From Macrostomum lignano (lineage: Eukaryota): a stretch of 64,000 bases of DNA. The position numbers were made by a program, and so were the translations under genes. The DNA is taken from NCBI GenBank assembly GCA_002269645.1, contig NIVC01003196.1:48523-112522 (forward strand). The letters run 5' to 3'. The notes under the pieces were generated by a model that ran no database searches, had not been told where the DNA came from, and saw only the letters and a program-made list of their open reading frames with translations. Positions 24,601-57,917 of this stretch are shown here, piece by piece; within the stretch, counting starts at the first letter, position 1; each line of letters starts with the position of its first letter.

Positions 24601-25917
24601 ACACGGCACACAAGACACTGCAGGACACACGGCACTGCAGGAGACACGGCACTGCAGGAGACACGGCACTGCAGGACACACGGCACTGCAAAACACACGG
24701 CACTGCAGGAGACACGGCACACACGGTACTGCAGGACACACGGCACTGCAGGACACATGGCACTGCAGGACACACGGCACTGCAGGACACAGGGCACTGC
24801 AGGAGACACGGCACTGCAGGAGACACGGCACTGCAGGACACAGGGCACTGCAGGACACACGGCACACAAGACACTGCAGGACACAGGGCACTGCAGGACA
24901 CACGGCACTGCAGGACACACGGCACTGCAGGACACACGGCACACAAGACACTGCAGGACACACGGCACTGCAGGACACACGGCACTGCAGGAGACACGGC
25001 ACTGCAGGACACACGGCACTGCAAGACACACGGCACTGCAGGAGACACGGCACACACGGCACTGCAGGACACACGGCACTGCAGGACACACGGCACTGCA
25101 GGACACACGGCACTGCAGGACACAGGGCACTGCAGGAGACACGGCACTGCAGGAGACACGGCACTGCAGGACACAGGGCACTGCAGGACACACGGCACAC
25201 AAGACACTGCAGGACACACGGCACTGCAGGACACACGGCACTGCAGGAGACACGGCACTGCAGGACACAGGGCACTGCAGGACACACGGCACACAAGACA
25301 CTGCAGGACACACGGCACTGCAGGACACACGGCACTGCAGGACACACGGCACTGCAGGACACACGGCACTGCAGGACACAGGGCACTGCAGGAGACACGG
25401 CACTGCAGGAGACACGGCACTGCAGGACACAGGGCACTGCAGGACACACGGCACACAAGACACTGCAGGACACACGGCACTGCAGGACACACGGCACTGC
25501 AGGACACACGGCACTGCAGGACACACGGCACTGCAGGACACACGGCACTGCAGGACACACGGCACTGCAGGACACAGGGCACTGCAGGAGACACGGCACT
25601 GCAGGAGACACGGCACTGCAGGACACAGGGCACTGCAGGACACACGGCACACAAGACACTGCAGGACACAGGGCACTGCAGGACACACGGCACTGCAGGA
25701 CACAGGGCACTGCAGGAGACACGACACTGCAGGAGACACGGCACTGCAGGACACAGGGCACTGCAGGACACACGGCACACAAGACACTGCAGGACACAGG
25801 GCACTGCAGGACACACGGCACTGCAGGAGACACGGCACTGCAGGACACACGGCACACAAGGCACTGCAGGACACACGGCACTGCAGGTGCACACGGCACT
25901 GTAGGAGACACGGCAAT
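9622..25917. repeat. Giant satellite array (~16.3 kb), 17-bp unit GGCACTGCAGGACACAC
   Basis: Roughly 950 units by length. One PstI site per unit; recurrent variant blocks indicate higher-order duplication. Confidence 0.98.
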
Positions 25918-31317: not shown

Positions 31318-32151
31318 CGAGTGTCAGATGAGTGTCAAATGAGTGTCAGGTGAGTGTCAAATGAGTGTCAGGTGAGTGTCAAATGAGTGTCAGATAAGTG
31401 TCAGATAAGTGTCAGATAAGTGTCAGATAAGTGTCAGATAAGTGTCAGATGAGTGTCAGATGAATGTCAGATAAGTGACAGGTGGGTGTCAGATGAGTGT
31501 CAGGTGAGTGTCAGGTGAGTGTCAGGTGAGTGTCAGATAAGTGTCAGATAAGTGTCAGATGAGTGTCAGATAAGTGTCAGATAAGTGTCAGATAAGTGTC
31601 AGATAAGTGTCAGATAAGTGTCAGATGAGTGTCAGATAAGTGACAGGTGGGTGTCAGATGAGTGTCAGGTGAGTGTCAGGTGAGTGTCAGGTGAGTGTCA
31701 GATAAGTGTCAGATAAGTGTCAGATAAGTGTCAGATAAGTGTCAGATGAGTGTCAGATAAGTGACAGGTGGGTGTCAGATGAGTGTCAGGTGAGTGTCAG
31801 GTGAGTGTCAGGTGAGTGTCAGATAAGTGTCAGATAAGTGTCAGATAAGTGTCAGGTGAGTGTCAATTGAGTGCCAGGGGAATGTCAGGTGAGTGTCAGG
31901 TGAGTGTCAGGCGAGTGTCAGATGAGTGTCAGATAAATGTCAGGTGAGTATCAGATGAGTATCAGATGAGTGACAGATGAGTGACAGATGAGTGACAGAT
32001 GAGTGACAGATAAGTGTCAGATAAGTGTCAGGTGAGTGTCAATTGAGTGCCAGGGGAGTGTCAGGTGAGTGTCAGGTGAGTGTCAGGTGAGTGTCAGGTG
32101 AGTGTTAGATGAGTGTCAGGTGAGTGTCAGGTGAGTGTTAGATGAGTGTCA
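31318..32151. repeat. 10-bp minisatellite GTCAGATAAGT/GTCAGGTGAGT (intronic)
   Basis: Tandem copies; many units contain CAGGTGAGT. Confidence 0.96.
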
Positions 32152-32187
32152 GGATATTTTCATGATTAAACTCTTAATCGCCTTAAG

Positions 32188-32373
32188 GACATGACAGACT
32201 CCAGCAGCGGCACCCAGTGGCCGAATCCATCGCTCAACGTCACCACAGTGGAGTACCAGAAACCGCGTACTGAACTCCTGAAGCGAGTTCTGAGCAATCG
32301 AACGGACAGTCTGCAGCTGTACGATCAGATGAGCCTGTGGGCCCAATGCCTGGCCAACCTGTACTGCACCAAT
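32188..32373 (+). CDS. iGluR/IR-like receptor, exon 4
   Basis: ttaag|DMTDSSSG..LNVTTVEYQKP..LYCTN|gtgagt. Confidence 0.75.
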
Positions 32374-32447
32374 GTGAGTTGTAGTTATAATTACCTAAAC
32401 TATAGAATTCAATGTTGAAAAAAATGATTTGGTTTCTGGACTAACAG

Positions 32448-32573
32448 ACTTCGAAGAAGGACACCGTTGTCACGGGTCTGACTGGAGATTTTCTGCTCAG
32501 CAGCAATGGCAGCATAGAGAGGCTAAACTGGCGGTTTGACATCTACAGAGGCCTGCTGGTTGAGGCTGAGCTG
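32448..32573 (+). CDS. iGluR/IR-like receptor, exon 5
   Basis: ctaacag|TSKKDTVVTGLTGDFLLSSNGSIERLNWRFDIY..EAEL|gtgagg. The GLTG..G..R..DI pattern marks the end of the iGluR amino-terminal domain. Confidence 0.85.
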
Positions 32574-32599
32574 GTGAGGCACCTTTAATGCTTTTTCCC

Positions 32600-33500
32600 A
32601 GCTGCCCAGCTGACACTTCTGACTCATCTGCTGACTCTCCAGCGTCTCATCTGACTCTCCAGTGTCTCATCTGACTCTCCAGTGTCTCATCTGACTCTCC
32701 AGTGTCTCATCTGACACCCCAGTGTCTCATCTGACACTCCAGCGTCTCATCTGACTCTCCAGTGTCTCATCTGACTCTCCAGTGTCTCATCTGACTCTCC
32801 AGTGTCTCATCTGACTCTCCAGTGTCTCATTTGACACCCCAGTGTCTCATCTGACTCTCCAGTGTCTCATCTGACTCTCCAGTGTCTCATCTGACACTCC
32901 AGTATCTCATCTGACACCCCAGTGTCTCATCTGACACTCCAGTGTCTCATCTGCTGACTCTCCAGTGTCTCATCTGACACTCCAGTATCTCATCTGACAC
33001 CCCAGTGTCTCATCTGACACTCCAGTGTCTCATCTGCTGACTCTCCAGTGTCTCATCTGACACTCCAGTATCTCATCTGACACCCCAGCGTCTCATCTGA
33101 CTCTCCAGTGTCTCATCTGACTCTCCAGTGTCTCATCTGACTCTCCAGTGTCTCATCTGACTCTCCAGTGTCTCATCTGACTCTCCAGTGTCTCATCTGA
33201 CACTCCAGTATCTTAGCTAACACTTCAGTATCTCAACTGACAATCCAGTATATCATCTGACACTCCAGTATCTCAGCTGACACTCCAGTATATCATCTGA
33301 CACTCCAGTATCTCAGCTGACACTCCAGTATATCATCTGACACTCCAGTATGTCATCTGACACTCCAGTATATCATCTGACAGTCCAGTATCTCATCTGA
33401 CACTCCAGTATCTCAACTGACACTCCAGTATGTCATCTGACATTCCCAGTGTCAATTACTGACAAGTGTCTGACACTCCAGTGTCCCATCTGACACTCCA
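32600..33500. repeat. 20-bp minisatellite CTCCAGTGTCTCATCTGAC(A/T) (intronic)
   Basis: Tandem copies. Confidence 0.96.
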
Positions 33501-33801
33501 GTGCTTCCATCCCTGTCTTGCCTCTTGCGTACTCCGCTGTCTTTTGTGACGCTCCACAGTAGCAGAAAATCCCATTCTCAAAAAATAGTAATTGACAGCT
33601 CGCGGACAGAGAGGTGGAACGAGCTGCCTCAAAACCCAATAGAGAGCCCTAAGAGTCAATTCTCATAACTGCATGGCTTCCATCTGCGTGTAATCACTTA
33701 TTTTTGCACGTGTTACTGTTGCTGCCCGCCTACGCTCCTCTTCATCCACTGGAGTGGCTGAAGTGGTGGCTGTCAATCAAAATAACCAGATGCCACTCTG
33801 T

Positions 33802-42240: not shown

Positions 42241-43143
42241 AATGTGCAATCGTGTCCTTTTTAGCCCTACTGCCGCACCCCGACCCTTCCAGTCTGCCCC
42301 ACCCTTTTTTTTCTCCATCAGTAATCAATGCGTACGCCACCTTGCACCTCACCCCCCATACCGTACATTTGTTCTAAGTTATATTCATGTACGCGTAGGA
42401 CAAGTGAAAAATATATACTGAATGGCCTGACGGCAGTCAGCATCGCGAGTCGGCCTCATGCTGAACGCGCGGAAGACGGTAGCGGACAACGCCGAGACCT
42501 GGACCCTGACGGCGCTTTGGAGAAGCAGCTGGACGCTGCGCATGCATACGTGCTCTACACGAGGGCACGCCTGATGCGGCCTTCTGACCTGCTGCTCGAG
42601 CGGCGACTTCGACTGGCTGGCCACGTCATCCGGTCGGAGGCTCGCTGCCCTGAGCCCCCTGTACGAGGTGCTGCTGCTCAAGCTGCAGGGACCGCGCAGG
42701 CGAGGCCAAGGGCGAACGGCGAGATTTCTGACAGGCTTTTGACCGATGCTGGCGCCCCGGACCAAGCTGGAGGTGTGACTTTCTGAGGCCTATGGCCCAG
42801 AGACGCGCTTTCTGACTTCTCCCCCCTTTCTGGCCACTGTGTGGCTGGCGGGGTGAAGAACTTTGTTGTTGTTGTTGTTGTATATAATGAAGTCGCTGCC
42901 TGGTGGGCAGCCGCCTCCCCTTGCTTGCGTTTGGTCCGCCCCCGTTGGCTATTGAGCAAAACTAAGTACTCGTCTACCATGAAAAGTGCACGGCGAACTG
43001 CATCGGCTTTGTTCGTGAGCTACTGTTCTTTTCCTGCTTCTCCCTAGGGCGCGGGACGGGAGCCTTGACTGGGGACCTGGGGGGTCGCAGCTTCCCACGA
43101 GTTAGGCTGCCGGCGTCGCTCCGAAGGGGGGCAGAACAACGCC
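42241..43143 (+). mobile_element. Insertion containing an internally deleted non-LTR (RTE-like) retrotransposon 3' fragment
   Basis: Across frames it reads RVGLMLNARKT (late RT motif), NAETWTLTA, LEKQLDAAH and RRLRLAGHVIR, followed by a (GTT)n tail at ~42860-42880. Confidence 0.75.
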
Positions 43144-44152
43144 TAGAGCTAGTGGGTCATGGACTAGTGGGTCATGCAGTTATTGGGTCATAGAGCTAGT
43201 AGGCCATGGCCTAGTGGGTCATAGAGCTAGTGGAACATGGACTAGTGGGTCATGCAGTTATTGGGTCATAGAGCTAGTGGGTCATGGACTAGTGGGTCAT
43301 GCAGTTATTGGGTCATAGAGCTAGTGGGTCATGGACTAGTGGGTCATGCAGTTATTAGTTCATAGAGCTAGTGGGTCATGGACTAGTGGGTCATGAAGTT
43401 ATTGGTTCATAGAGCTAGTAGGCCATGGCTTAGTGGGTCATAGAGCTAGTGGGTCATGGACTAGTGGGTCATGTAGTTATTGGTTCATAGAGCTAGTGGG
43501 TCATGGACTAGTGGGTCATGTAGTTATTGGTTCATAGTGCTAGTGGGTCATGGACTAGTGGGTCAAAGAATATTTGGTCATAGACTAGGGGTTCATAGAC
43601 TAGTGGGTCATAGAATAGTGGGTCATGGACTAGTTGGTTGTAGAATAGTGGGTCATGGACTAGTTGGTCGTAGAATAGTGGGTCATGGACTAGTTGGTCA
43701 TAGAATAGTGGGTCATGGACTAGTTTGTCATAGAATAGTAGGTCATGGACTAGTTGGTCATAGAATAGTGGGTCATGGACTAGTTGGTCATAGAATAGTG
43801 GGTCATGGACTAGATGGTCATAGAATAGTGGGTCAAGGACTAGTTGGTCATAAAATAGTGGGTCAAGGACTAGTTGGTCATAGAATAGTGGGTCATAGAC
43901 TAGTTTGTCATAGAATAGTAGGTCATGGACTAGTTGGTCATAGAATAGTGGGTCATGGACTAGTTGGTCATAGAATAGTAGGTCATGGACTAGATGGTCA
44001 TAGAATAGTGGGTCAAGGACTAGTTGGTCATAAAATAGTGGGTCAAGGACTAGTTGGTCATAGAATAGTGGGTCATGGACTATTTGGTCATAGAATAGTG
44101 GGTCATGGACTATTTGGTCATAGAATAGTGGGTCATGGACTAGTTGGTCATA
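43144..44152. repeat. Same satellite family, right part, grading into a 30-bp unit
   Basis: Unit GGTCATAGAATAGTGGGTCATGGACTAGTT. Confidence 0.94.
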
Positions 44153-44499
44153 GTACAAGGGAATCTAAGAGCTCGAGTTTATTTCGTATATTTACCAAGA
44201 CAAATTGGAATTATTTTTTTTTTTTTGCTTCGTAAATTTAAATAATCAGCAAAATAGTTTTCAATAATACATGTATATTTTATTGAGCTTTAAATAATAG
44301 TAAAATATGGCAAAATTATAGCATAATAAATCAACTTCTGCAGAAATTATTGCGTGATAAACAGACACATAAAAATTGTCACTAATAATCAACGTTTGGT
44401 AAAATAACTGCAATAAATCCAAATGGAATAAAAGTATTGATTTGTTGTTACTGTAAAATTTATTTGTTATAGTGCGAAAATTCATTCAGGATCCACTCA

Positions 44500-45240
44500 C
44501 ATCTAACAATGAGCAATTGCCATCTGTCTATGACCAACTCACATCTGTCAATGACCAACTCACTTCTGTCAATGACCAACTTATATCTGTCAATGACCAG
44601 CTCAGATCTGTCAATGACCAACTCACATTTATCAATGACCAACTCACATCTGTCTATGACTAACCTATATTTGTCTATGACCAACTTATATCTGTCTATG
44701 ACCAACTCACATTTATCAATGACCAACTTATATCTGTCTATGACCAACTTATATCTGTCTATGACCAAGCTCAGATCTGTCAATGACCAACTCAGATCTG
44801 TCAATGACCAGCTCAGATCTGTCAATGACCAACTCAGATCTATCAATGACCAAATTACATTATCAATAACCAAATCCAACTCGTATTTATCAATGACCAA
44901 CTCACATTTATTAATGACCAACTCACATCTATCAATGACCAACTCAGATTTATCAATGACCAAATCACATCTATCAATGACCAAATCACATCTATCAATG
45001 ACCAACTTACATCTATCAGTGACCAAATCACATCTATCAATGACCAAATCACATCTATCAATGACCAACTCCAACTCGCATTTATCAATCACCAACTCCA
45101 ACTCGCATTTATCAATGACCAACTCCAACTCGCATTTATCAATGACCAACTCCAACTCGCATTTATCAATGACCAACTCCAACTCGCATTTATCAATGAC
45201 CAACTCCAACTCGCATTTATCAATGACCAACTGATGCCAT
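44500..45240. repeat. 21/27-bp minisatellite ATCTATCAATGACCAACTCAC downstream of the CRYM stop
   Basis: Tandem copies; reverse complement of the array at 45785-46080. Confidence 0.95.
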
Positions 45241-45363
45241 CTTCAATGATAAATTAACATTATACCATAGTCAACAGACCTATAAGCAACTCAATGAACT
45301 CATGAAAACAAATGAGCAATTAGCATCTACCAATAACCAATAGGCTGTCACCAATGACCAGTT

Positions 45364-45768
45364 TCACTCCTTCATCCGGAGATCCCACACTAGCCGGGCA
45401 GTGGCGGCGTCCTCAATGCCCAGTCCAAGCGACTTGAAGACGGTGAGGCCGCCGCGGCTGGCCCGGGCCTCGCGGAACCGCTCGGGATGGGCGATGAGCT
45501 CGCCAAGCTCCGCGTGCACCGTCGCCTTGTTGACGATGACGTCGCCCGACTCACTGCTCGCCGACTCTCGACTGTCAGCGACGAGGAACGCCGCCGAGGT
45601 GACGGACTCGTCCAGCTCGCGCTGGTCCGGCCGGCAGGCGCCGACAGCGTTCACGTGACACAGGCGGGGCAGCCAATCGGCGCGCAGCACTGGGTCACGT
45701 GACGAGGTCACCGTGCACACAATGTCTGCCTGGTCTACGGCAGCCTTGGCCGATTCGCAGTCCTCAAC
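45364..45768 (-). CDS. CRYM: Mu-crystallin/ornithine cyclodeaminase family, exon 3 (terminal)
   Basis: ctgtcag|VEDCESAKAAVDQADIVCTVT..HVNAVGA..ELD..LVAD..ESGD..ELGEL..TVFKSLGLGIEDAATA..TGA. Confidence 0.95.
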   Translation of the reverse strand, partial: VEDCESAKAAVDQADIVCTVTSSRDPVLRADWLPRLCHVNAVGACRPDQRELDESVTSAAFLVADSRESASSESGDVIVNKATVHAELGELIAHPERFREARASRGGLTVFKSLGLGIEDAATARLVWDLRMKE

Positions 45769-45784
45769 CTGACAGGAATTGATA

Positions 45785-46080
45785 AATATGAGTTGGTCAT
45801 TGATAGATGCGAGTTGGTAATTGATAGATATGAGTTGGTCATTGATAGATATGAGTTGGTCATTGATAGATGAGAGTTGGTCATTGATAGATGAGAGTTG
45901 GTCATTGATAGATATGAGCTGGTCGTTGATAGATAAGAGTTGGTCATTGATAGATAATATTTGGTCATTGATAGATATGAGTTGGTCATTGATAGATGCG
46001 AGTTGGACATTGATAGATAATATTTGGTCATTGATAGATATGAGTTGGTCATTGATAGATGCGAATTGGTCATTGATCGA
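45785..46080. repeat. 21-bp minisatellite GAGTTGGTCATTGATAGATAT (CRYM intron 2)
   Basis: Tandem copies. Confidence 0.95.
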
Positions 46081-46143
46081 TAGGGGTTGCTCATTGATGG
46101 ATGCGCTTGTTAAATCTCTAACCAGTCCTTTCAGCTAGATTAC

Positions 46144-46336
46144 CTTCATGACATCCGGCTTGAATTTGGCAGACAGCATAATCTTTTCTACCAGAGCAGC
46201 TCGCCTCTCGGGGTTCCGACTGTGCACCCGGATGCATTCAATGGCGAACAGAGTGGCTATGGCCTCGAAGTGGCTGAACGCTTGGGCGCCGGAGCCCAGC
46301 AAAGCCAGGGTTCGACTTTGCGGATGAGCAAGGTGC
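46144..46336 (-). CDS. CRYM: CRYM exon 2 (Rossmann fold start)
   Basis: ctcaaag|G HLAHPQSRTLALLGSGAQA..VMK|gtaat. It carries the GxGxQA nucleotide-binding motif and is phase-compatible with both first exons. Confidence 0.94.
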
Positions 46337-46409
46337 CTTTGAGATAAAGAGGTTGGGTCAGGATAAGCAAAGTAGAGTGACGTCATATTTGTAGGCTCGA
46401 TTGAGAAAT

Positions 46410-46700
46410 GTATATCAAACGGCAAGAGCAGATAGCGTGGCGGTACATCAAAGGACATGGGCAGATAGGGTGGCGATACATCAAAGAACATGGACAGATA
46501 GGATGGCGGTACTCGTACAACAAAGTACATGGGCAGAAAAGGTGGCGGAACATCAAAGGACATTGGCAGATAAGGGTAGCGGCACTTCAAAGGACATGTG
46601 TAGATAGGGTGGCGGCACTTCAAAGGACATGGGTAGATAGGGCGGCGGCACATCAAAAGACATGGGCAGATAGGGTGGGCGGCACATCAAAGGAACTGAG
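46410..46700. repeat. Degenerate 33-bp repeat (CRYM intron)
   Basis: Unit GGCGGCACATCAAAGGACATGGGCAGATAGGGT. Confidence 0.9.
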
Positions 46701-46723
46701 AGTAGGTCCCACTGCAGGCTAAC

Positions 46724-47109
46724 CTGGATGCCACAGCACTGGCAGCAGCAGTTCGAATACAGGTGATCTCCTCAGCATCCAGCAGAGCTTGCAGACTGCC
46801 ATTGTTGGGGTCAAACAAGGTCACAATGCCTTGGTGACTGGACAGGTCAGTGTTTCCAGGAAACACAGTGACCAGCTTGCAAGCGAGGGCGGAGTCGGGC
46901 GCGCTGTAGCAGGGCATGGTGAGCAGCAAGCCGGTGCTGCCGGAGTCCACTTTAGTGCGCATAGGCTGACAAAACTCGGACTTCTTAGTCGAGTAGGTGA
47001 TGAGGGATCGTTCCACGGTGGGGATCAGATCCTCATAGGAGAGCAATCCTTTGATTTCTTGGCCCGAGATGAATGGGGGTGTACCGTGTTGTTGTTGAGT
47101 TGTTGCCAT
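46724..47109 (-). CDS. CRYM: CRYM first coding exon, proximal copy (1B)
   Basis: MATTQQ..MPCY..LACKLVTVFPGN..HQGIVTLFDPNNGSLQALLDAEEITCIRTAAASAVAS; donor AG|gttag, phase 2. Confidence 0.94.
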
Positions 47110-47281
47110 GGTAACTGTAATTTTTTTTCTGAATTTCTATACCGACTGTTAATGTTAATGAATCAAGTGCAGGTTCACTCACATAACTTAAATTACTTAG
47201 GTACATCAATAATAGAATATGGTATTATTTTGGACAATAAAGTGACGCATTTAGCAAAGAATGATGCACCTGATGTGCAGA

Positions 47282-47880
47282 TGTGCCACCTAAGCGAATC
47301 ATAAAAGCCCATAGCCCTTTCATGTGCCACCTAAGCGAATCATAAAAGTCCATAGCCCTTTCATGTGCCACCTCAGCGAATCATAAAAGTCCATAGCCCT
47401 TTCATGTGCCACCTCAGTGAATCATAAAAGTCCATAGCCCTTTCATGTGCCACCTCAGTGAATCATAAAAGTCCATAGCCCTGAAGTGCCACCTCAGTGA
47501 ATCATAAAAGTCCATAGCCCTTTCATGTGCCACCTCAGCGAATCATAAAAGTCCATAACCCTTTTATGTGCTACCTCAGCGAATCATAAAAGTCCATAGC
47601 CCTTTCATGTGCCACCTCAGCGAATCATAAAAGTCCATAGCCCTTTCATGTGCCACTTCAGCGAATCATAAAAGTCCATAGCCCTTTTATGTGCCACCTC
47701 AGCGAATCATAAAAGTCCATAGCCCTTTCATGTGCCACCTCAGCGAATCATAAAAGTCCAAAACCCTTTTGACGTGCCGCCTTGGCAAATCATAAACCTT
47801 TAACGTGCCGCCTCGGAAAATTATAACCCTTTGATGTGCCGCCTTGGCAAACTCATAACCCTTTGATGTGCCGCCTTAGC
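47282..47880. repeat. 41-bp minisatellite between CRYM exons 1A and 1B
   Basis: Unit ATGTGCCACCTCAGCGAATCATAAAAGTCCATAGCCCTTTC. Confidence 0.95.
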
Positions 47881-47947
47881 AAACGCTGATCTTTTGATGC
47901 AGAGCAAACGTCTAGCAAGTGGCTGGAAATGCCAAGCAAAAATCTAC

Positions 47948-48312
47948 CTGGATGCCACAGCACTGGCAGCAGCAGTTCGAATACAGGTGATCTCCTCAGC
48001 ATCCAGCAGAGCTTGCAGACTGCCATTGTTGGGGTCAAACAAGGTCACAATGCCTTGGTGACTGGGCAGGTCATTGTTTCCAGGAAACACAGTGACCAGC
48101 TTGCAGGCGAGAGCAGCATCAGGCGCATTGTAGCAGGGCATGGTAGCCAAAATGCCATTGTTGCTAGTGAAAACTTTTTCTCTAAGTGGCTGGTGGAATT
48201 GGGACTTCCAGTTTGAATAAGTGACTAAAGAGCGTTCCACAACTGGGATGAGGTCCTCATAGGTTAGGAGAGCTTTAATTTCAGGACCAGTGATAAAAAC
48301 AGGGTTGCTCAT
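47948..48312 (-). CDS. CRYM: CRYM first coding exon, distal copy (1A)
   Basis: MSNPVFITGPEIKALL..RTAAASAVAS; donor AG|gtaga, phase 2; reading frame intact. Confidence 0.9.
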
Positions 48313-50143
48313 TGTGCTAGAAACATAGTTTGGTTTAATAAATATTAGGAAATTCGAAAATATTATTAAAATGCAATAATTTAAACAACAGAACCTAAAA
48401 TACAATTCTTGAAACTCTAATCTCAAATCTGCCTTATCTTTTCATCTTTTTCATACATAATAAATTATGATAATGCATTATAAAAGTAAATGTTGGAACA
48501 ATTTGAATATAATAATATAATCTATTTTAGCATTGTTCATCCTAATATCAATATTCAATAACTGACTGACTAAAAATTATTACATAGTTTAATGTCATGA
48601 TTCAATACTTTTATGGCCAATAAAATCCTATTTTTGTGTGTTTCTTATACATTTAAGTAATTTATCCGATGGTTTAATGATTGAATAATTGAATGACTAA
48701 ATGGCCATATGATTCACAGTTTTCACTTTACTTTTTACATCACCCTTGTCCCTTGCAAAGTTTGAATCTGTTTGATAGAACTCAAACTAACATTTTTGTG
48801 ATTTCAAAAGGTAGTAAGACATAAGGCATAAGGCATTTGCTTAAGACAATGCAATAATGATGTTCTACTTTTTTGCGTTCTCGTGCAAAATGGATTTGGC
48901 TGTAGAAAGTGATCGACAGGTATTTTTAACAGCATAAACTAATTGAAATCTTAAGCCGTTAAGGTAGCATATACTGTGGAAACAAAATGCAATTACAGAA
49001 AACTGTCTGTCTGTATTTTTATTCTAAGAAAAGTTAGTTCAGTCATTGACCAAAGGGTCAAAGCTGTCACTTCGTAACTAACAACGATCATAATGGTGGA
49101 ATATATATTTATTAGAATATTAAAATTTCGAGCGATAACTCTAGATCTTTTAAGCGGGTGAAAAAATAAAACAGGAAAAACATAAGTTTATTTTAAAAAA
49201 TGTATAGAGCTGTTTAGGTAAGTTATTAAATATTTAATATAAAAATTTTTTATCTTTAACAAATGAGCTACAATATACAGCATTTAAATTTGTTTTAAAT
49301 AGTTTTTAGAGTCTCGTGCTACTTTTAATTCAGCAATTGAGAGTGTTATTTTTGCCTCTCTTGCAAACTGCTCTGTAAGAAGGAACAATAATAAATCACT
49401 TAAAGATACGCATATAGAGCTGCATCTCTATTTTTGTAGATTAGGAAACATGCACCATTGCAGCTATGAATTGTAAACTGGAACTAAAATCAAGCTAGTC
49501 AATACAATAGTTCGGCGATTTTCGACTTTCCCGCTCTAAATTATTTTTCGGAAAAGTCGAAAATCGCCAACACTTCAAATTCACACAGAATTATAATTGT
49601 AAGTTAAGGACCTATCAATCATATTAATTTTGACCAGTGTAGTAGGACAGTGGTTTTTTCACAATCAAGATCTGTAATTTGTGCTTTTGCTATTGTAATC
49701 AGTGCTTGTTCAATTGTTCTAGAAATTTGTATAGGCCTAGGTAGGCATAGGGAGTAACAACTGAATGATTCCATGAAATTAAGCCTATTTAATGCCAATT
49801 GCCAATGAATTCGAAGGCCTATGGTAAGGGTCTATTTTAGTTATGCTCTCTGTAATAGGCCTATGCCTATGGACCTAGTTATGGTAAAGCTGTTGAAATT
49901 TTATCTAATTTTATATAGGGTCTAGTATACTTATCCAGACAGTGGATTTTAGATATTATTTTCAGGTTTAGTTATATAGATTAATGATTGAACAGTGCAA
50001 GTTTCATAAAAAAGCAGTTGAGTAGTTTTTAAAAAATTAATTGCTTATATACCTAGATAGATACTTATTTATGCAGATTTTAGATATTATGTTTATAGTT
50101 CCTCTTTGTCTGCTTTGTTAATATAGTACTTGGCTATAGTAGC

Positions 50144-50870
50144 GGCTTCCAGACAATCCGGCGACAAGACAATCCGGCAACAGACAATCCGTCGATAGTC
50201 AATCTGGCAACAGATGATCTGGCAACAGATATTAAATCAACATATATTAGCATATATACGGATTAGTAGAGCTACTATTTTTAGCTCTTTGTACTTGTAC
50301 TTAAATACTTTAATAACAATTACTTAAACTACAATTGTTGCAGTTATTACTGCTGTACTTATAGCTGTTGATTTTCAAAATATCATTTTCAAAGAAAGCT
50401 ACCCCTATAAAAATAGTCTTAGCTTGTTTTTTACTGCCAAGTTTTATATTTACATGTACATGCGAAAAAGCAAATAGTTTAGAATATAATATTGGATCAT
50501 AGTCATACAAATTTGATTTCTAAGCAGATTTAACTGATAAAATTGTATTCAGAAAGAAATTAATCTAGAATTTAGCTAAAACAATCTAGAAAAATTAGCC
50601 GGCAAAACACAACCTTTCTTTGAAAATAACATTTTGCAAATCAATAGCTATGTATAGCTGTAAAAATAAAACTGCAAAAATTAAAGTTCAGGTAATTGTT
50701 ATTTAATTATTTAAGTATTACTAAGTAATAATAAAGAGCTAAAAATAATAGCTTAACTATATGCTGATATATCTTGATTTAATATCTGTCGCTGGATCAT
50801 CTGTCGCCGGATTGACTGTCGCCAGATTGTCTGTCGCCGGATCGTCTTGTCGCCAGATTGACTGGATACC
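50144..50870. mobile_element. Non-autonomous DNA transposon (MITE), 727 bp, long imperfect terminal inverted repeats (TIRs), 8-bp TSD ATAGTAGC
   Basis: Ends are GGCTTCCAGACAATC... and ...GATTGACTGGATACC. Arms of ~170 bp carry subterminal CCGGCGACA repeats. ATAGTAGC occurs at 50136-50143 and 50871-50878. Confidence 0.88.
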
Positions 50871-52435
50871 ATAGTAGCTTACCCAAGAGGGTAAGGAGGG
50901 AGGTAATTGGCCCCTTTAGTCTATATCAAGACTTTAAAAAATCAAGAAGGACAAGTGCATTTTTGCCAAAATATAGAGCTACCCCCTTTGCCTCTCTCTT
51001 GACTCTTAGATCTTTATCCTTTAAAATCTATTTCCTTTTTCAATAAATTTCTGGGTATTCTATCTGGACCTTAGTTTTTTAAACCTCTCAATAGTAATCT
51101 ACCCTACTTAATGTTTATTTTTCTTATTGATATTTTACAATAGTCCACTCTTTGATCACATGTATCCTAATGAGATTATCTAAGTGTGTTAGTTCTTTTC
51201 TTTAATATCTGATCTTCCCTCTTCTGTCTTTTCTTCTTTTCTTCTCTCTTTTCTCTTATCCTTTCTTCTCTTTTCCTTGATTTTTTCTTGTCTTTCCTCC
51301 ACTTTATCTTCTTTCCTCTCTTTTTTATTCTCTTAACTTTCCTTTTTCTATCTCCCTCCTCTTCTCTATTCCCTTTCCTATCCCTTCTTTTGGCCTACAG
51401 TGATGCTCTAGGCTGTCTATTTAGTCTAGGTCCTCAAAATTAAAAAAATTTGCTTTCCTTAATCTAAGTAGTTCTTATTTCTTACTAGTCATATTCTTAT
51501 TATTTACTAGTAGCATTCTTAGTTCTAAACTAGTAGCATTCTTGTTATATACCAAAAGGTCTATTACTAATATTTTATTTTTTGTATATATTTCTTAGAA
51601 TAATTCTTCTTGGAATATATCTGCTATTTAAGAATTTAACTATCTAGTCTTTAGGTAAAACCAAGAGTAGAAAGTCATGAGTTTCTTTATACTATATATT
51701 TATCTCCAAGATCTATAAGTATGAGTATTTGTATTATATTTCTTTTATCTATTTATGAGTATTTTGCTCTTTTTAGAAATAAGAAAGTCTAAAATAGAAT
51801 TCTCAATGTTTACTTGGAATACAACTGTAAGTCTTACATCTTACCAAATTTTGTATTTGTTTATACTAATTTTTTGGTTCATTTAAAGCAAAAAGTGAAT
51901 GTGAATATCATTATAAAATGTGTATAAACTTTAAAAAAATATAGTAGAGTTGTATATACATTAAATTTGTACTAAATTTTTTGTTAGAAAAAGGAAAGTT
52001 TTCTATATATAATATTATATATTTTATATTTTTTAAACCTATTTTTTCTAAACTACATCTTATAATATGGTCTTAGTTTAAAACTTAGGTCTATTTTCAT
52101 TTTGCAGTGTATTTACTCAAGATATAGGGCCATAGCACTCTTATGATGTCACAAAGCATGCTATCTTTAGACTTTGATTATGTAAGTATTTTTAAACTAA
52201 AAACTATTTTCTTGATGATAAATTAATGTTAATGTTTTATGCAGATATTGATACATAATATTGACACTTATGCTTGCTAATACAGAAGGTGCCATAGCCA
52301 TACTCTTTCTAACATTACAACTTTATTTAGGCAAATTCATTCTAAATCTTTCTGAACAATTAATTCACATGCCAGAACTATTAAAAGAAATTTTAAGGAA
52401 AAACTTCATAAACAGAGAAACAGAACAAAATTTTA

Positions 52436-52989
52436 ATGAATCCTATGTCACAGACAGTTTTTGATCACGAAGAGCTCCATCATCTGCCCCTGCCAGCATC
52501 TTGCCACCTGCTCGAGTCAGAAATTCTTCTGCGGGTTGGTCGCCTCGCCAATGGCCAGATCATCGCCCTGACCAGCTACCGATTGCTCATCCTTGTGCAC
52601 AGATTTGTCAGCTGTGACAGTGTCCCGGAGTCAAGTCTTGATCCAGTCTTTGTCCAGCCGCTGCGTTGCATCTCTCGATTAATCACGGCAGGCATTGAGT
52701 TTACCGCTATTCGAGTTGAATTTGTTTTAATTGCCTCACCGCTTGCGCTGCAGTTTGCCAGTGCGGCTGAGGCTCTGAGCTGGGCGCGGCAGCTGGACCC
52801 GTCCGCCATCGCTGCGCTGCCCCATCTGCGTTGCAGTTTGAATTCGAGCAGTCTGACCGAAGATGAAGCTGCTGATCCGAACGAATTGATTGTTGCCATG
52901 GAAACCCGCCGGTTAGGCTTAACAGAAGCAAATGGCTGGCGGCTGAGCAAAGCGAATGAGGAGTACTCAGTCTGCAGCAGTTATTCCAG
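52436..52989 (+). CDS. MTMR3/4: Myotubularin-related protein, exon 1 (PH-GRAM-like region, WRLS..N..YSVCSSY)
   Basis: Donor AG|gtgagg, phase 2; the start codon choice is uncertain. Confidence 0.85.
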
Positions 52990-52994
52990 GTGAG

Positions 52995-53720
52995 GCTGAG
53001 AATTTGATCGTTTGAGAATTCTTATGGTGAGATTTTAAAAATCTAGATTTTTGTCACCGGTGAGATTTTGAAGATTTAGATTTTTGTTGATCTAGATTCT
53101 TGTCATCGGTGAGATTTTAAAGATCTAGATTCTTATCATCGATGAGATTTTGAAGATCTAGATTCTTTAAGGGTGAGATTTTGAGGATCTAGATTCTGTC
53201 AAGGCTGAGAATTTGATCGTTTGAGAATTCTTATGGTGAGATTTTAAAAATCTAGATTTTTGTCACTGGTGAGATTTTTAAGATTTAGATTCTTGTCATC
53301 GGTGAGATTTTAAAGATCTAGATTCTTGTCATCGGTGAGATTTTGAAGATCTAGATTCTTGTCATCGGTGAGATTTTGAAGATCTAGATTCTTGTCATCG
53401 GTGAGATTTTAAAGATCTAGATTCTTGTCATCGGTGAGATTTTAAAGATCTAGATTCTTGTCATTGGTGAGATTTTGAACATCTAAATTCTTGTCATCGG
53501 TGAGATTTTAAAGATCTAGATTCTTGTCATTGGTGAGATTTTGAGGATCTAGATTCTGTCAAGGGTGAGATTTTGAAGATCTAGATTCTTGCCAAGGGTA
53601 AGATTTTGAGGATCTAGATTCTGTCAAGGGTGAGATTTTGAAGATCTAGATTCTTGCCAAGGGTAAGATTTTGAGGATCTCGATTTTTGTTAAGGGTGAG
53701 ATTTTTAATACCAGAATTTC
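52995..53720. repeat. 33-bp minisatellite GGTGAGATTTTAAAGATCTAGATTCTTGTCATC (MTMR intron 1)
   Basis: Tandem copies. Confidence 0.95.
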
Positions 53721-55116: not shown

Positions 55117-57650
55117 AACACTCCAGTGACTCTCCTGACACTCCAGTGACTCTCCTGACACTCCAGTGACTCTCCTGACACTCCAGTGACTCTCCTGACA
55201 CTCTAGTGACTCTCCTGACACTCCAGTGACTCTCCTGACACTCTAGTGACTCTCCTGACACTCCAGTGACTCTCCTGACACTACAGTGACTCTCCTGACA
55301 CTCCAGTGACTCTCCTGACACTCCAGTGACTCTCCTGACACTCCAGTGACTCTCCTGACACTCCAGTGACTCTCCTGACACTACAGTGACTCTCCTGACA
55401 CTCCAGTGACTCTCCTGACACTCCAGTGACTCTCCTGACACTCCAGTGACTCTCCTGACACTACAGTGACTCTCCTGACACTCCAGTGACTCTCCTGACA
55501 CTCCAGTGACTCTCCTGACACTCCAGTGACTCTCCTGACACTCCAGTGACTCTCCTGACACTCCAGTGACTCTCCTGACACTCCAGTGACTCTCCTGACA
55601 CTACAGTGACTCTCCTGACACTCCAGTGACTTTCCTGACACTACAGTGACTCTCCTGACACTTCAGTGACTCTCCTGACACTACAGTGACTCTCCTGACA
55701 CTCCAGTGACTCTCCTGACACTACAGTGACTCTCCTGACACTCCAGTGACTTTCCTGACACTACAGTGACTCTCCTGACACTTCAGTGACTCTCCTGACA
55801 CTACAGTGACTCTCCTGACACTCCAGTGACTCTCCTGACACTACAGTGACTCTCCTGACACTTCAGTGACTCTTCTGACACTACAGTGACTCTCCTGACA
55901 CTCCAGTGACTCTCCTGACACTACAGTGACTCTCCTGATACTCCAGTGACTCTCCTGACACTCTAGTGACTCTCCTGACACTACAGTGACTCTCCTGACA
56001 CTTCAGTGACTCTCCTGACACTACAGTGACTCTCCTGACACTCCAGTGACTCTCCAGACACTACAGTGACTCTCCTGATACTCCAGTGACTCTCCTGACA
56101 CTACAGTGACTCTCCTGACACTCCAGTGACTCTCCTGACACTACAGTGACTCTCCTGATACTCCAGTGACTCTCCTGACACTCTAGTGACTCTCCTGACA
56201 CTACAGTGACTCTCCTGACACTCCAGTGACTTTCCTGACACTACAGTGACTCTCCTGACACTCCAGTGACTGTCAAAACACTCTAGTGACTCTCATGACA
56301 CTCCAGTGACTCTTCCGACACTCAAGTGACTCTCCTGACACTCCAGTGACTCTCATGACCCTCTAGTGACTCTCCTGACACTCCAGTGACTCTCCTGACA
56401 CTCTAGTGACTCTCCTGACACTCCAGTGACTCTCCTGACACTACAGTGACTCTCCTGACACTCCAGTGACTCTCCTGACACTCCAGTGACTCTCCTGACA
56501 CTCCAGTGACTCTCCTGACACTCCAGTGACTCTCCTGACACTACAGTGACTCTCCTGACACTCCAGTGACTCTCCTGACACTCCAGTGACTCTCCTGACA
56601 CTCCAGTGACTCTCCTGACACTACAGTGACTCTCCTGACACTCCAGTGACTCTCCTGACACTCCAGTGACTCTCCTGACACTCCAGTGACTCTCCTGACA
56701 CTCCAGTGACTCTCCTGACACTCCAGTGACTCTCCTGACACTCCAGTGACTCTCCTGACACTCCAGTGACTCTCCTGACACTACAGTGACTCTCCTGACA
56801 CTCCAGTGACTTTCCTGACACTACAGTGACTCTCCTGACACTTCAGTGACTCTCCTGACACTACAGTGACTCTCCTGACACTCCAGTGACTCTCCTGACA
56901 CTACAGTGACTCTCCTGACACTCCAGTGACTTTCCTGACACTACAGTGACTCTCCTGACACTTCAGTGACTCTCCTGACACTACAGTGACTCTCCTGACA
57001 CTCCAGTGACTCTCCTGACACTACAGTGACTCTCCTGACACTTCAGTGACTCTTCTGACACTACAGTGACTCTCCTGACACTCCAGTGACTCTCCTGACA
57101 CTACAGTGACTCTCCTGATACTCCAGTGACTCTCCTGACACTCTAGTGACTCTCCTGACACTACAGTGACTCTCCTGACACTTCAGTGACTCTCCTGACA
57201 CTACAGTGACTCTCCTGACACTCCAGTGACTCTCCAGACACTACAGTGACTCTCCTGATACTCCAGTGACTCTCCTGACACTACAGTGACTCTCCTGACA
57301 CTCCAGTGACTCTCCTGACACTACAGTGACTCTCCTGATACTCCAGTGACTCTCCTGACACTCTAGTGACTCTCCTGACACTACAGTGACTCTCCTGACA
57401 CTCCAGTGACTTTCCTGACACTACAGTGACTCTCCTGACACTCCAGTGACTGTCAAAACACTCTAGTGACTCTCATGACACTCCAGTGACTCTTCCGACA
57501 CTCAAGTGACTCTCCTGACACTCCAGTGACTCTCATGACCCTCTAGTGACTCTCAAAACACTCTAGTGACTCTCATGACACTCCAGTGACTCTTCCGACA
57601 CTCAAGTGACTCTCCCGACGCTCCAGTGACTCTCATGACACTCCATTAAA
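55117..57650. repeat. 20-bp satellite CTCCAGTGACTCTCCTGACA (MTMR intron 2)
   Basis: About 125 copies, with an internal 1180-bp duplication. Confidence 0.98.
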
Positions 57651-57917
57651 CTCTCCTAACACGGCTATGACTGTTTCGACAAGCCATTAACTGTTTTGAC
57701 ATTCCATTGACTCTCCGGACCCTCATTGACTGTTCTGATACCTCCTAACAGTTTATTGACTCTCCTAACACCTCACAGACACTGTGACACCTCATTGACT
57801 CTTCTTATACTCGATCAATCGTTCTGACACCACATCCGCTACCTTTTTGAGTTCTGACCGAATTTCGAGCTTTGCCAGCACGGCAGCCCTACAAATTTGC
57901 AACCCGCCAATCCGCAG

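What the first reader, a model, noticed from the sequence alone, without database searches (positions are those of the whole stretch)
45364..48312. CRYM/ornithine cyclodeaminase gene with two intact, alternative N-terminal-domain exons sharing one C-terminal half
Seen: two homologous first coding exons (1A 47948-48312, 1B 46724-47109). Each has its own ATG, an open frame and a phase-2 donor at the identical codon, but there is only one copy of exons 2-3. Their first ~70 aa have clearly diverged (e.g. NWKSQFHQPLREKVFTSNNGILA vs TKKSEFCQPMRTKVDSGSTGLLL). Established: in the mu-crystallin/OCD fold the N-terminal part builds the dimer and substrate-binding domain, while the later part is the NAD(P)-binding Rossmann fold. 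Inference: one locus makes two ketimine-reductase-like isozymes with swappable substrate/dimer modules on a common cofactor domain, in a cassette-like manner. I am not aware of this arrangement in this family.
Basis: partly seen in the sequence, partly recalled or inferred. Interest (0 to 1): 0.75.

Follow-up and report, generated by a model that had tools for sequence, protein, structure and literature searches.

The report
Flatworm CRYM gene, duplicated first exon
A mu-crystallin/ketimine-reductase gene of the flatworm Macrostomum lignano carries two intact, selectively maintained copies of its first coding exon ahead of one shared cofactor-binding half, most likely used as alternative first exons; this is a familiar way of making two enzyme variants, and use of the upstream copy in mRNA is still unproven.

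Summary
The window is Macrostomum lignano DNA. On the minus strand lies a 3-exon OCD/mu-crystallin gene with two homologous first exons and one copy of exons 2-3. Exon 1A is 47948-48312 and exon 1B is 46724-47109. Each has its own ATG and the same phase-2 donor.

- Not an assembly artefact: a second, collinear copy of the locus (NIVC01000070.1) has the same pair.
- Exon 1A is not a neutral relic. Its diverged 5' two-thirds show pS 0.80 against pN 0.23 versus 1B. It is no further from a related species' ortholog than 1B is. It fits the family profile as well as 1B and has no stops or indels.
- The 3' 160 nt of both exons are kept nearly identical by gene conversion. The two predicted proteins therefore differ only in about the first 83 residues.
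- No transcript evidence for a 1A-exon 2 junction could be obtained. Public models either use 1B alone or chain 1A and 1B, which is probably an artefact.
- The design is the known one of tandem exon duplication giving alternative first exons, as in UGT1A.
- RefSeq already annotates a mutually exclusive N-domain exon pair in a Ptychodera flava CRYM-like gene.

Verdict: real, moderately interesting, a new member of a known kind.

The parts
47948..48312 (-). Exon 1A: the upstream alternative first coding exon. It is 365 nt, has its ATG at 48312 and encodes 121 codons plus 2 nt. If left unspliced, a TAG follows directly after the donor.
   Evidence: Against 1B, the 5' part has pS 0.80 and pN 0.23. 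It scores 128.0 bits on the family HMM, against 124.3 for 1B.
47948..48108 (-). The 3' part of exon 1A that is homogenised with exon 1B (gene-conversion tract).
   Evidence: 158/161 nt identical to 46724-46884. Identity stops at the GT of the donor. Three substitutions are shared by both exons of the second locus.
47110..47947 (-). Intron after exon 1A. It holds minisatellites at 47281-47899 (41-nt and 31-nt units) carrying 12 transcript-sense copies of the core GGCGGCACATCAAAGG. It has no AATAAA or ATTAAA.
47110..47280 (-). Unique AT-rich segment just 5' of exon 1B. It is the probable 5' UTR and internal promoter region. It contains an A8 run (A7 in the second locus) and candidate acceptors TTCAG| (47129) and TTACAG| (47115).
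   Evidence: The GenBank model PAA91884.1 reads through this segment unspliced.
46724..47109 (-). Exon 1B: the proximal first coding exon (386 nt). This is the form found in the transcript-based GenBank model of the second locus and the one closest to the related species' mRNA.
46337..46723 (-). Intron between exon 1B and exon 2. Its 33-nt minisatellite (46414-46694) carries 6 copies of the reverse complement of the intron-A core.
46144..46336 (-). Exon 2, shared by both forms. It is the start of the Rossmann fold and contains the GSGAQA motif.
45769..46143 (-). Intron 2, with a 21/63-nt minisatellite at 45778-46102.
45364..45768 (-). Exon 3, shared by both forms. It is the last coding exon and includes the TGA stop.
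44495..45232 (+). Minisatellite in the 3' flank. It is inverted relative to the intron-2 array, so exon 3 is also bracketed by inverted arrays.

Best explanation
This is a mu-crystallin/ketimine-reductase-like gene of Macrostomum lignano whose first coding exon was duplicated in tandem long ago. That exon encodes the whole N-terminal lobe, up to an intron position conserved across animals.

Both copies have been kept as coding sequence. They are most likely used as alternative first exons, each spliced through the same phase-2 donor to the single exon 2:
- 1B from a start site inside the 1A-1B intron.
- 1A from an upstream start site in the 4-kb AT-rich region shared with a divergently oriented myotubularin-related gene.

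The products would be two NAD(P)H-dependent imine-reductase subunits of 320 and 327 aa. They are identical from about residue 84 onward and differ at 26 positions plus a 7-residue N-terminal extension. The differences include the strand and loop next to the substrate-binding Arg.

Recurrent gene conversion between the two exons keeps their 3' 160 nt identical.

Shown: anatomy, family membership, antiquity of the duplication, purifying selection on both copies, conversion, presence in two copies of the locus.

Inferred: the 1A-exon 2 splice, separate promoters, any functional difference.
For: - **Anatomy and frames:**
- **Organism and second locus:** the organism is identified by a 100% match to UniProt A0A1I8HNF4. 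A collinear second locus, L001 = NIVC01000070.1, is 95-97% identical and has both exons intact with the same donors. M. lignano is a recent hidden polyploid (PMC10468722).
- **Long-term constraint on 1A:**
  - In the unconverted 5' part, pS is 0.80 (saturated) and pN is 0.23 against 1B.
  - Amino-acid identity is 65% for each of 1A-1B, 1A-outgroup and 1B-outgroup.
  - The nonsynonymous branch lengths I derived from the pN values are 0.106 for 1A and 0.127 for 1B.
  - On a profile built from 48 non-Macrostomum family members, 1A scores 128.0 bits and 1B 124.3. For the diverged part alone the scores are 44.6 and 41.6.
  - All family-invariant residues in exon 1 are kept in both.
  - Neutral simulation at the observed divergence gives P < 5e-5 of keeping the frame open with at least 65% identity.
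- **Recent constraint on 1A:** between the two loci the 5' part has 3 nonsynonymous and 5 synonymous changes (binomial p = 0.017). There are 0 indels where 2.9 are expected from the flanks.
- **One transcription unit:** there is no polyadenylation hexamer between 1A and the 3' end of the gene, so a 1A transcript must run into the shared exons.
- **1B as a true first exon:** the transcript-based GenBank model PAA91884.1 starts 96 nt upstream of the 1B ATG and reads unspliced through the candidate acceptors.
- **The 1A-1B linker is not coding:** an A8/A7 length difference shifts its frame between the two loci.
- **Domain boundary:** the exon 1/2 boundary coincides with the start of the Rossmann match. 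It also coincides with an intron position shared with Mytilus, Aplysia and Ptychodera.
Against: - No mRNA or protein record joining 1A to exon 2 was found for either locus.
- The GenBank annotation of the second locus, taken here to be transcript-based, has no called gene over 1A.
- Two RNA assemblies from the related species show only one N-terminus, and it is 1B-like.
- 1A has a lower GC3 (0.48) than 1B (0.68) and exons 2-3 (0.76).
- Between the two loci 1A changes at about the neutral rate (8/198). This includes replacements L15F, P23T and H40Y in the second locus. The same part of 1B has 1/198. So present-day constraint on 1A may be weaker.
- A YTNCAG-type acceptor (TTACAG) 5 nt before the 1B ATG could capture the 1A donor and give a frameshifted product.
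Confidence: 0.55

Rival explanations
1. Exon 1A is a formerly functional duplicate that is now unused or only rarely used. It still looks intact because it died recently and because gene conversion from or with 1B refreshes its 3' third. The gene effectively makes only the 1B protein.
For: - Only 1B-type models come from the GenBank annotation (taken here to be transcript-based), and no called gene covers 1A there.
- The related species expresses one 1B-like form.
- GC3 of 1A has drifted towards the AT-rich surroundings.
- Between the two loci, 1A has 8 changes in its 5' part against 1 in 1B. One of them replaces the consensus Pro of the LIP motif.
- Conversion is demonstrated.
Against: - Conversion does not reach the 5' 200 nt. 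That part still has an open frame, no indels, a 3N:5S pattern between loci (p = 0.017) and an undiminished family-profile score.
- Both copies of the locus keep the ATG and the donor.
- The composition of the shared 3' part resembles 1A more than 1B (GC3 0.54 against 0.68). This hints at conversion from 1A into 1B rather than rescue of 1A.
Confidence: 0.22
2. Both exons lie in one mRNA, 1A spliced to an extended 1B. The product would be a protein of about 455-487 aa with two tandem N-terminal lobes on one Rossmann domain, as in UniProt models A0A1I8HNF4 and A0A1I8GHK4.
For: - Two UniProt models chain the exons.
- In the window, the 1A donor joined directly to the acceptor TTCAG|A at 47129 is in frame through 1B.
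- Purifying selection on 1A would also fit this reading.
Against: - The linker frame is not conserved. With A8 against A7, the same acceptor is out of frame in the second locus.
- The two UniProt models use different acceptors, plus a roughly 36-nt intron and an 84-nt mini-exon inside a minisatellite.
- The GenBank model reads unspliced through these acceptors.
- The direct-fusion protein is in no database searched.
- A duplicated half-domain has no precedent among the solved family structures matched here.
Confidence: 0.07
3. Exon 1A is expressed but serves another role than making a full enzyme. It could give a stand-alone 122-aa N-lobe peptide from unspliced RNA, since a stop follows directly after the donor, and this peptide might interfere with dimers. 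Alternatively it could act as an upstream ORF or NMD switch by splicing to the TTACAG acceptor and so regulate 1B output.
For: - A TAG follows immediately after the 1A donor.
- The TTACAG acceptor matches the species' YTNCAG acceptor motif. Joining it to 1A gives a premature stop.
Against: - There is no polyadenylation hexamer after 1A.
- Conservation of the donor in the same phase as 1B, and of the substrate-binding residues, is best explained by a full enzyme.
- The 122-aa ORF is not recorded anywhere searched.
Confidence: 0.1
4. The duplicate exon is an assembly or haplotype artefact.
For: The 3' 160 nt of the two exons are almost identical.
Against: - The 5' 200 nt are 37% different.
- The pair occurs in the same order in a second locus from an independent assembly, and in gene models from a third source.
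- The flanking introns are unrelated to each other.
Confidence: 0.01

Closest known systems
Mammalian mu-crystallin / ketimine reductase (CRYM; mouse 4BV8/4BVA, human 2I99)
   Same: - Best solved relatives (E = 7e-62 and 4e-60, aligned over residues 4-315).
- Same two-lobe layout.
- The equivalents of Arg47, Lys75 and Arg118 are kept in both exon versions.
- Rossmann GxGxxA motif present.
   Different: - About 43% identity.
- The flatworm gene has 3 coding exons rather than about 8 and has a duplicated first exon.
- Enzyme activity and substrates are untested.
- Positions equivalent to mouse Val49 and Phe79 are Lys and Val in both forms. Phe58 is Ile in 1A and Leu in 1B (numbering from PMC9202446 mapped through the alignment).
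UGT1A-type loci: tandemly duplicated alternative first exons on shared downstream exons
   Same: Homologous first exons, each with its own ATG, encode the substrate-side N-terminal part and join common exons that encode the cofactor-binding part (PMC9013439).
   Different: - Only two first exons here, and a different enzyme family.
- Separate promoters are not demonstrated.
- The 3' third of the two exons is homogenised by conversion, so the variable part is only about 83 residues.
Ptychodera flava ketimine reductase mu-crystallin-like isoforms X1/X2 (XP_070580653.1 / XP_070580654.1)
   Same: - Same protein family.
- Two homologous alternative exons inside the N-terminal lobe on a common Rossmann half.
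- I rebuilt isoform X1 from the genomic exon 2b and it matched the RefSeq protein exactly.
   Different: - An independent duplication of a different, internal exon. It is 151 nt, covers residues about 61-110, and is strictly mutually exclusive because 151 is not a multiple of 3.
- It is not a first exon.
- The two copies are only about 36% identical, with no sign of conversion.
Mutually exclusive exon choice by competing or looping intronic RNA pairing (Dscam, 14-3-3zeta, PGRP-LC; exon skipping by flanking inverted repeats)
   Same: - Exon 1B is bracketed by arrays of a 16-nt core and its reverse complement: 12 and 6 copies, against 0.04 expected by chance.
- The second locus has the same arrangement.
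- The predicted fold of the pre-mRNA pairs the two introns (168 pairs) and loops 1B out.
   Different: - The arrays are minisatellites, not single conserved docking and selector sites.
- The same inverted-array arrangement also brackets constitutive exon 3 and two non-coding segments in this window.
- The folding energy is no better than with one array flipped.
- No conservation beyond the 4%-diverged second locus could be tested.
Existing public models of this gene (UniProt A0A1I8HNF4, A0A1I8GHK4; GenBank PAA91884.1)
   Same: They cover the same exons. A0A1I8HNF4 is 100% identical to the window's exons.
   Different: - None represents 1A+2+3.
- The UniProt models fuse 1A and 1B.
- The GenBank model starts at an upstream ATG that is in frame only in the second locus.

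Membership tests
Ornithine cyclodeaminase / mu-crystallin family (Pfam PF02423) | Full-length match to the family profile above the curated cut-off | tested here: met
   217.2 bits with 1A and 212.0 bits with 1B, against a cut-off of 24. Profile positions 7-308 of 314 are covered.
Ornithine cyclodeaminase / mu-crystallin family (Pfam PF02423) | Rossmann NAD(P)-binding domain with a glycine-rich motif after the N-terminal lobe | tested here: met
   The LLGSGAQA motif lies in exon 2. A Shikimate_DH-type match starts at residue 120 or 127, but at 21.4/21.3 bits it is below Pfam's curated cut-off of 24.3. It aligns to VLCILGAGVQA of mouse CRYM.
Ornithine cyclodeaminase / mu-crystallin family (Pfam PF02423) | Conserved substrate-carboxylate-binding Arg, Lys and Arg in the N-terminal lobe | tested here: met
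   R44, K71 and R112 (1A numbering) are invariant or nearly invariant in the 50-sequence alignment and are present in both 1A and 1B. They align to mouse Arg47, Lys75 and Arg118 (PMC9202446).
Ornithine cyclodeaminase / mu-crystallin family (Pfam PF02423) | NAD(P)H-dependent imine reduction or cyclodeamination activity | not testable with these tools
   Needs an enzyme assay.
Alternative first exons that arose by tandem exon duplication (UGT1A type) | Adjacent homologous exons in the same orientation, each with a start codon, with the same donor phase onto one shared exon | tested here: met
Alternative first exons that arose by tandem exon duplication (UGT1A type) | Both exon copies maintained by purifying selection | tested here: met
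   Constraint on 1A since the two loci split is suggestive only (3N:5S, p = 0.017).
Alternative first exons that arose by tandem exon duplication (UGT1A type) | mRNAs contain one or the other first exon, never both | not testable with these tools
   Only a 1B-first model exists. No 1A-exon 2 record was found. The fusion models are probably artefacts.
Alternative first exons that arose by tandem exon duplication (UGT1A type) | A separate transcription start for each first exon | not testable with these tools
   Indirect only. The GenBank model extends at least 96 nt into the 1A-1B intron without splicing.
RNA-structure-guided exon choice (docking/selector or looping-out) | Complementary intronic elements positioned to loop out or select one exon | tested here: met
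   16-nt perfect complements lie 72 nt after the 1A donor and 30 nt after the 1B donor, in multiple copies, in both loci.
RNA-structure-guided exon choice (docking/selector or looping-out) | The pairing elements are specific to the alternative exons and conserved across species | tested here: not met
   - The same inverted-minisatellite layout brackets exon 3 and two non-coding segments.
- There is no energy gain over a flipped control.
- Cross-species conservation could not be tested.

The most novel reading that the evidence does not exclude
Both exons are used. The choice between the distal 1A donor and the proximal 1B donor would be steered by the inverted minisatellite arrays. In transcripts that start upstream of 1A, the arrays pair across exon 1B and loop it out. 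Transcripts that start inside the intron lack the upstream arm and so use 1B. This would be an RNA-structure-coupled promoter and first-exon switch in a flatworm. It would yield two ketimine-reductase isozymes with different substrate-loop sequences, and it would have arisen in parallel with the hemichordate exon pair in the same enzyme family.
Probability: 0.1. Interest if true: 0.6.

Novelty: new member of a known kind. Interest (0 to 1): 0.33.

Why it matters
**Annotation.** No public model represents the likely 320-aa 1A form. Two UniProt entries carry an implausible tandem-lobe fusion. The GenBank entry starts at a non-conserved upstream ATG.

**Biology.** If both forms are made, this is a compact natural experiment in the OCD/mu-crystallin fold. 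About 80 N-terminal residues around the substrate-binding strand are varied on a constant cofactor domain. An independent parallel exists in a hemichordate, which suggests that this lobe is a recurrent target for isoform diversification.

**Evolution.** The locus is a clean example of partial exon homogenisation by gene conversion. The tract is bounded exactly by the splice donor, and there is concerted change within each of two genome copies.

None of this overturns current understanding.

Tried and rejected
- **Exact look-ups of spliced products.** I looked up 1A+2+3 and 1B+2+3 from both loci, the direct fusion, and the unspliced 1A and 1B ORFs, in the 15-billion-protein collection and the contig index.
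- **Three homology searches.** They returned no further Macrostomum sequences beyond the two UniProt fusion models, PAA91884.1, a frameshifted third model (A0A1I8FN45) and one related-species transcript. The index is not exhaustive: the 100%-identical P0001 was missed. Absence is therefore weak evidence.
- **Literature searches.** Searches for the gene identifier, for Macrostomum with crystallin, and for mu-crystallin with mutually exclusive exons gave nothing relevant.
- **Rfam scan** of 43000-53000 found nothing.
- **SL trans-splicing.** I considered it as the way 1B gets its 5' end, because TTACAG matches the species' acceptor motif. It could not be tested. The related species' mRNA has an adapter-defined 5' end without a spliced leader.
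- **Inverted arrays as a dedicated 1B-skipping device.** I downgraded this after finding the same layout around exon 3 and around non-coding segments, and after the flipped-array control.
- **Exon duplicates in other animals.** Mytilus trossulus and Aplysia californica CRYM loci have none.
Full report
**What is there**

The region lies in a repeat-rich eukaryotic window. A full-length protein assembled from the proposed exons is 100% identical to a Macrostomum lignano UniProt entry, so the organism is this free-living flatworm.

| Feature | Coordinates | Length | Notes |
|---|---|---|---|
| Exon 1A | 47948-48312 | 365 nt | ATG at 48312, donor CAG\|GTAGAT |
| Exon 1B | 46724-47109 | 386 nt | donor CAG\|GTTAGC |
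| Exon 2 | 46144-46336 | 193 nt | shared |
| Exon 3 | 45364-45768 | 405 nt | shared, includes TGA |

- Both first exons have an ATG and end in phase 2 within the same Arg codon.
- 1A+2+3 encodes 320 aa and 1B+2+3 encodes 327 aa. Each matches Pfam OCD_Mu_crystall over its whole length (217 and 212 bits).
- The closest solved structures are mouse and human mu-crystallin.
- Exons 2 and 3 occur once in the 64 kb.
- The exon 1/2 junction sits where a sub-threshold NAD-binding Pfam match (Shikimate_DH, 21.4 bits against a cut-off of 24.3) begins.
- That junction also coincides with an intron position shared with Mytilus, Aplysia and Ptychodera. There the same stretch is split into three exons.
- The duplicated unit is therefore the whole N-terminal lobe.

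**Not an artefact**

A second, collinear locus in an independent assembly (L001, NIVC01000070.1) is 95-97% identical in its flanks. It has 1A', 1B', exon 2 and exon 3 in the same order, with all frames and donors intact. M. lignano is a recent hidden polyploid (PMC10468722). The two loci are therefore probably duplicated genome copies. The exon pair predates their split.

**Mosaic history of the two exons**

- The last roughly 160 nt of 1A and 1B differ at 2-3 positions, and identity stops exactly at the GT of the donor.
- The first roughly 207 aligned nt differ at 76 positions (Fisher p = 2.6e-19).
- In the second locus both exons carry the same three changes relative to the window: Leu->Met, a silent GAT->GAC, and Ile->Met.
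- This is concerted evolution, meaning gene conversion between 1A and 1B after the loci separated.
- The predicted proteins therefore differ only in about the first 83 residues: 26 substitutions plus a 7-residue extension on 1B.

**Is 1A a live exon?**

Long-term evidence from the unconverted 5' part:
- Synonymous sites are saturated (pS 0.80) while pN is 0.23.
- A transcript from a related species serves as outgroup.
- 1A, 1B and the outgroup are each 65% identical to one another at the protein level. From the pN values I derive nonsynonymous branch lengths of 0.106 for 1A and 0.127 for 1B.
- Against a profile built only from 48 non-Macrostomum family members, 1A scores slightly higher than 1B (128.0 against 124.3 bits; 44.6 against 41.6 for the diverged part).
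- Every family-invariant residue of this region is present in both.
- A neutral simulation at the observed divergence keeps an open frame with at least 65% identity in fewer than 1 of 20,000 trials.
- So 1A was under protein-level selection for most of its history.

Evidence since the two loci split is thinner:
- There are 3 replacement and 5 silent changes in the 5' part (p = 0.017 against neutrality).
- There are no indels where about 2.9 are expected from the flanks.
- However, the overall rate is near neutral (8/198) while 1B has 1/198.
- GC3 of 1A is lower (0.48 against 0.68).

**Transcript evidence**

This is the gap in the case.
- No database record joins 1A to exon 2.
- GenBank PAA91884.1, at the second locus, starts at an ATG 96 nt upstream of the 1B start codon. 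It reads unspliced through the candidate acceptors. This argues for a transcription start inside the 1A-1B intron, so that 1B is a true first exon.
- That upstream ATG is in frame only in the second locus, because an A-run is A7 there and A8 in the window. It is therefore 5' UTR.
- The same 1-nt difference breaks the frame of a direct 1A-to-1B splice in one locus or the other.
- The two UniProt fusion models (483 and 487 aa) need a roughly 36-nt intron, a mini-exon inside a minisatellite, and different acceptors in the two loci. I regard them as prediction artefacts.
- There is no AATAAA or ATTAAA between 1A and the end of the gene. A transcript that begins at 1A must therefore continue into the shared exons.

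**A possible mechanism, and why I hold it loosely**

- The intron after 1A contains 12 copies of GGCGGCACATCAAAGG in the sense of the transcript.
- The intron between 1B and exon 2 contains 6 copies of its reverse complement. The motif occurs nowhere else in the window, and 0.04 matches are expected by chance.
- The second locus has 12 and 11 copies.
- The predicted fold of the 1.7-kb pre-mRNA pairs the two introns (168 pairs) and encloses 1B.
- Such pairing would favour the distal 1A donor in transcripts that contain both arms. Transcripts that start inside the intron would lack the upstream arm.

Three results argue against a dedicated role:
- The same layout of inverted minisatellite arrays also brackets the constitutive exon 3.
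- It also brackets two segments with no sign of coding.
- Flipping one array leaves the folding energy unchanged (-536.0 against -535.5), and shuffles give up to 142 cross pairs.

The layout looks like a general property of this genome, which may or may not be exploited here.

**Functional difference**

- The substrate-binding Arg, Lys and Arg are identical in both forms.
- Of the mouse CRYM ligand-contact positions listed in PMC9202446, only the Phe58 equivalent differs (Ile against Leu).
- Non-conservative differences lie next to the Arg: Glu against Thr at +1, Phe against Asp at +4, and TSNN against SGST in the following loop.
- A different substrate range is possible, but it is only an inference.

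**Comparison with known cases**

- The design is that of UGT1A and other genes with tandemly duplicated alternative first exons (PMC9013439).
- Within the same enzyme family there is already a public example. The Ptychodera flava CRYM-like gene has two 151-nt homologous exons in the N-terminal lobe. The isoform I assembled with the second exon is exactly RefSeq XP_070580653.1 (isoform X1), and the other is XP_070580654.1 (isoform X2).
- That duplication is independent of the flatworm one.
- Mytilus and Aplysia have no such duplicate.

**Verdict**

It is unproven at the RNA level, its scope is smaller than claimed, and it is less unusual than thought. It is a new member of a known kind.

Noticed in passing
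window 45118-46123, compared with L001 about 11282-12287: A stretch of 1,006 bp has zero differences between the two loci. It covers intron 2 with its whole minisatellite, exon 3 and 247 nt of 3' flank. The flanks differ by 3-5%. This points to a recent conversion between the two genome copies, and copy number within the array is preserved.
   Followed up: partly
window 31319-33503, 43150-45232, 44495-46102, 46414-47899: Four of 29 neighbouring minisatellite arrays are reverse complements of each other and are separated by 340-590 bp of unique sequence. Only one neighbouring pair is direct. Two spacers hold exons (1B and 3) and two look non-coding. This foldback-like layout appears to be a recurrent feature of the genome.
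   Followed up: partly
window 9624-25915: A 16.3-kb array of about 1,000 copies of a 17-nt unit (ACACACGGCACTGCAGG). It has 63% GC and a strong strand asymmetry, with AT skew of about 0.67.
   Followed up: no
L004 (Ptychodera flava CM083797.1) about 12704-12854 and 15233-15383: A mutually exclusive pair of 151-nt homologous exons in a CRYM-like gene, corresponding to RefSeq isoforms X2 and X1. The copy used in X2 is strongly diverged from the family consensus (RFRDRDKTCVAGPRS in place of YPGNAEKGLQTH).
   Followed up: yes
window 52436-52993 (+) and onward to about 59200: A divergently oriented neighbour gene starts 4.1 kb upstream of exon 1A. Its counterpart in L001 is annotated with myotubularin-related and FYVE domains. 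Its introns carry a 2.5-kb array of a 20-nt unit at 55118-57662.
   Followed up: no
L002 1-61 and L006 1-79: Two independent RNA assemblies of the related species' ortholog begin at the same nucleotide. In one, that nucleotide directly follows Illumina adapter sequence. The 5' end is therefore probably the true cap site. The 5' UTR is 61 nt and has no spliced leader.
   Followed up: partly
UniProt A0A1I8FN45 (P0003): A third M. lignano model of this gene carries 1B-type sequence with several apparent frameshifts. It may be a further copy or a low-quality assembly region. No DNA was available to check.
   Followed up: no
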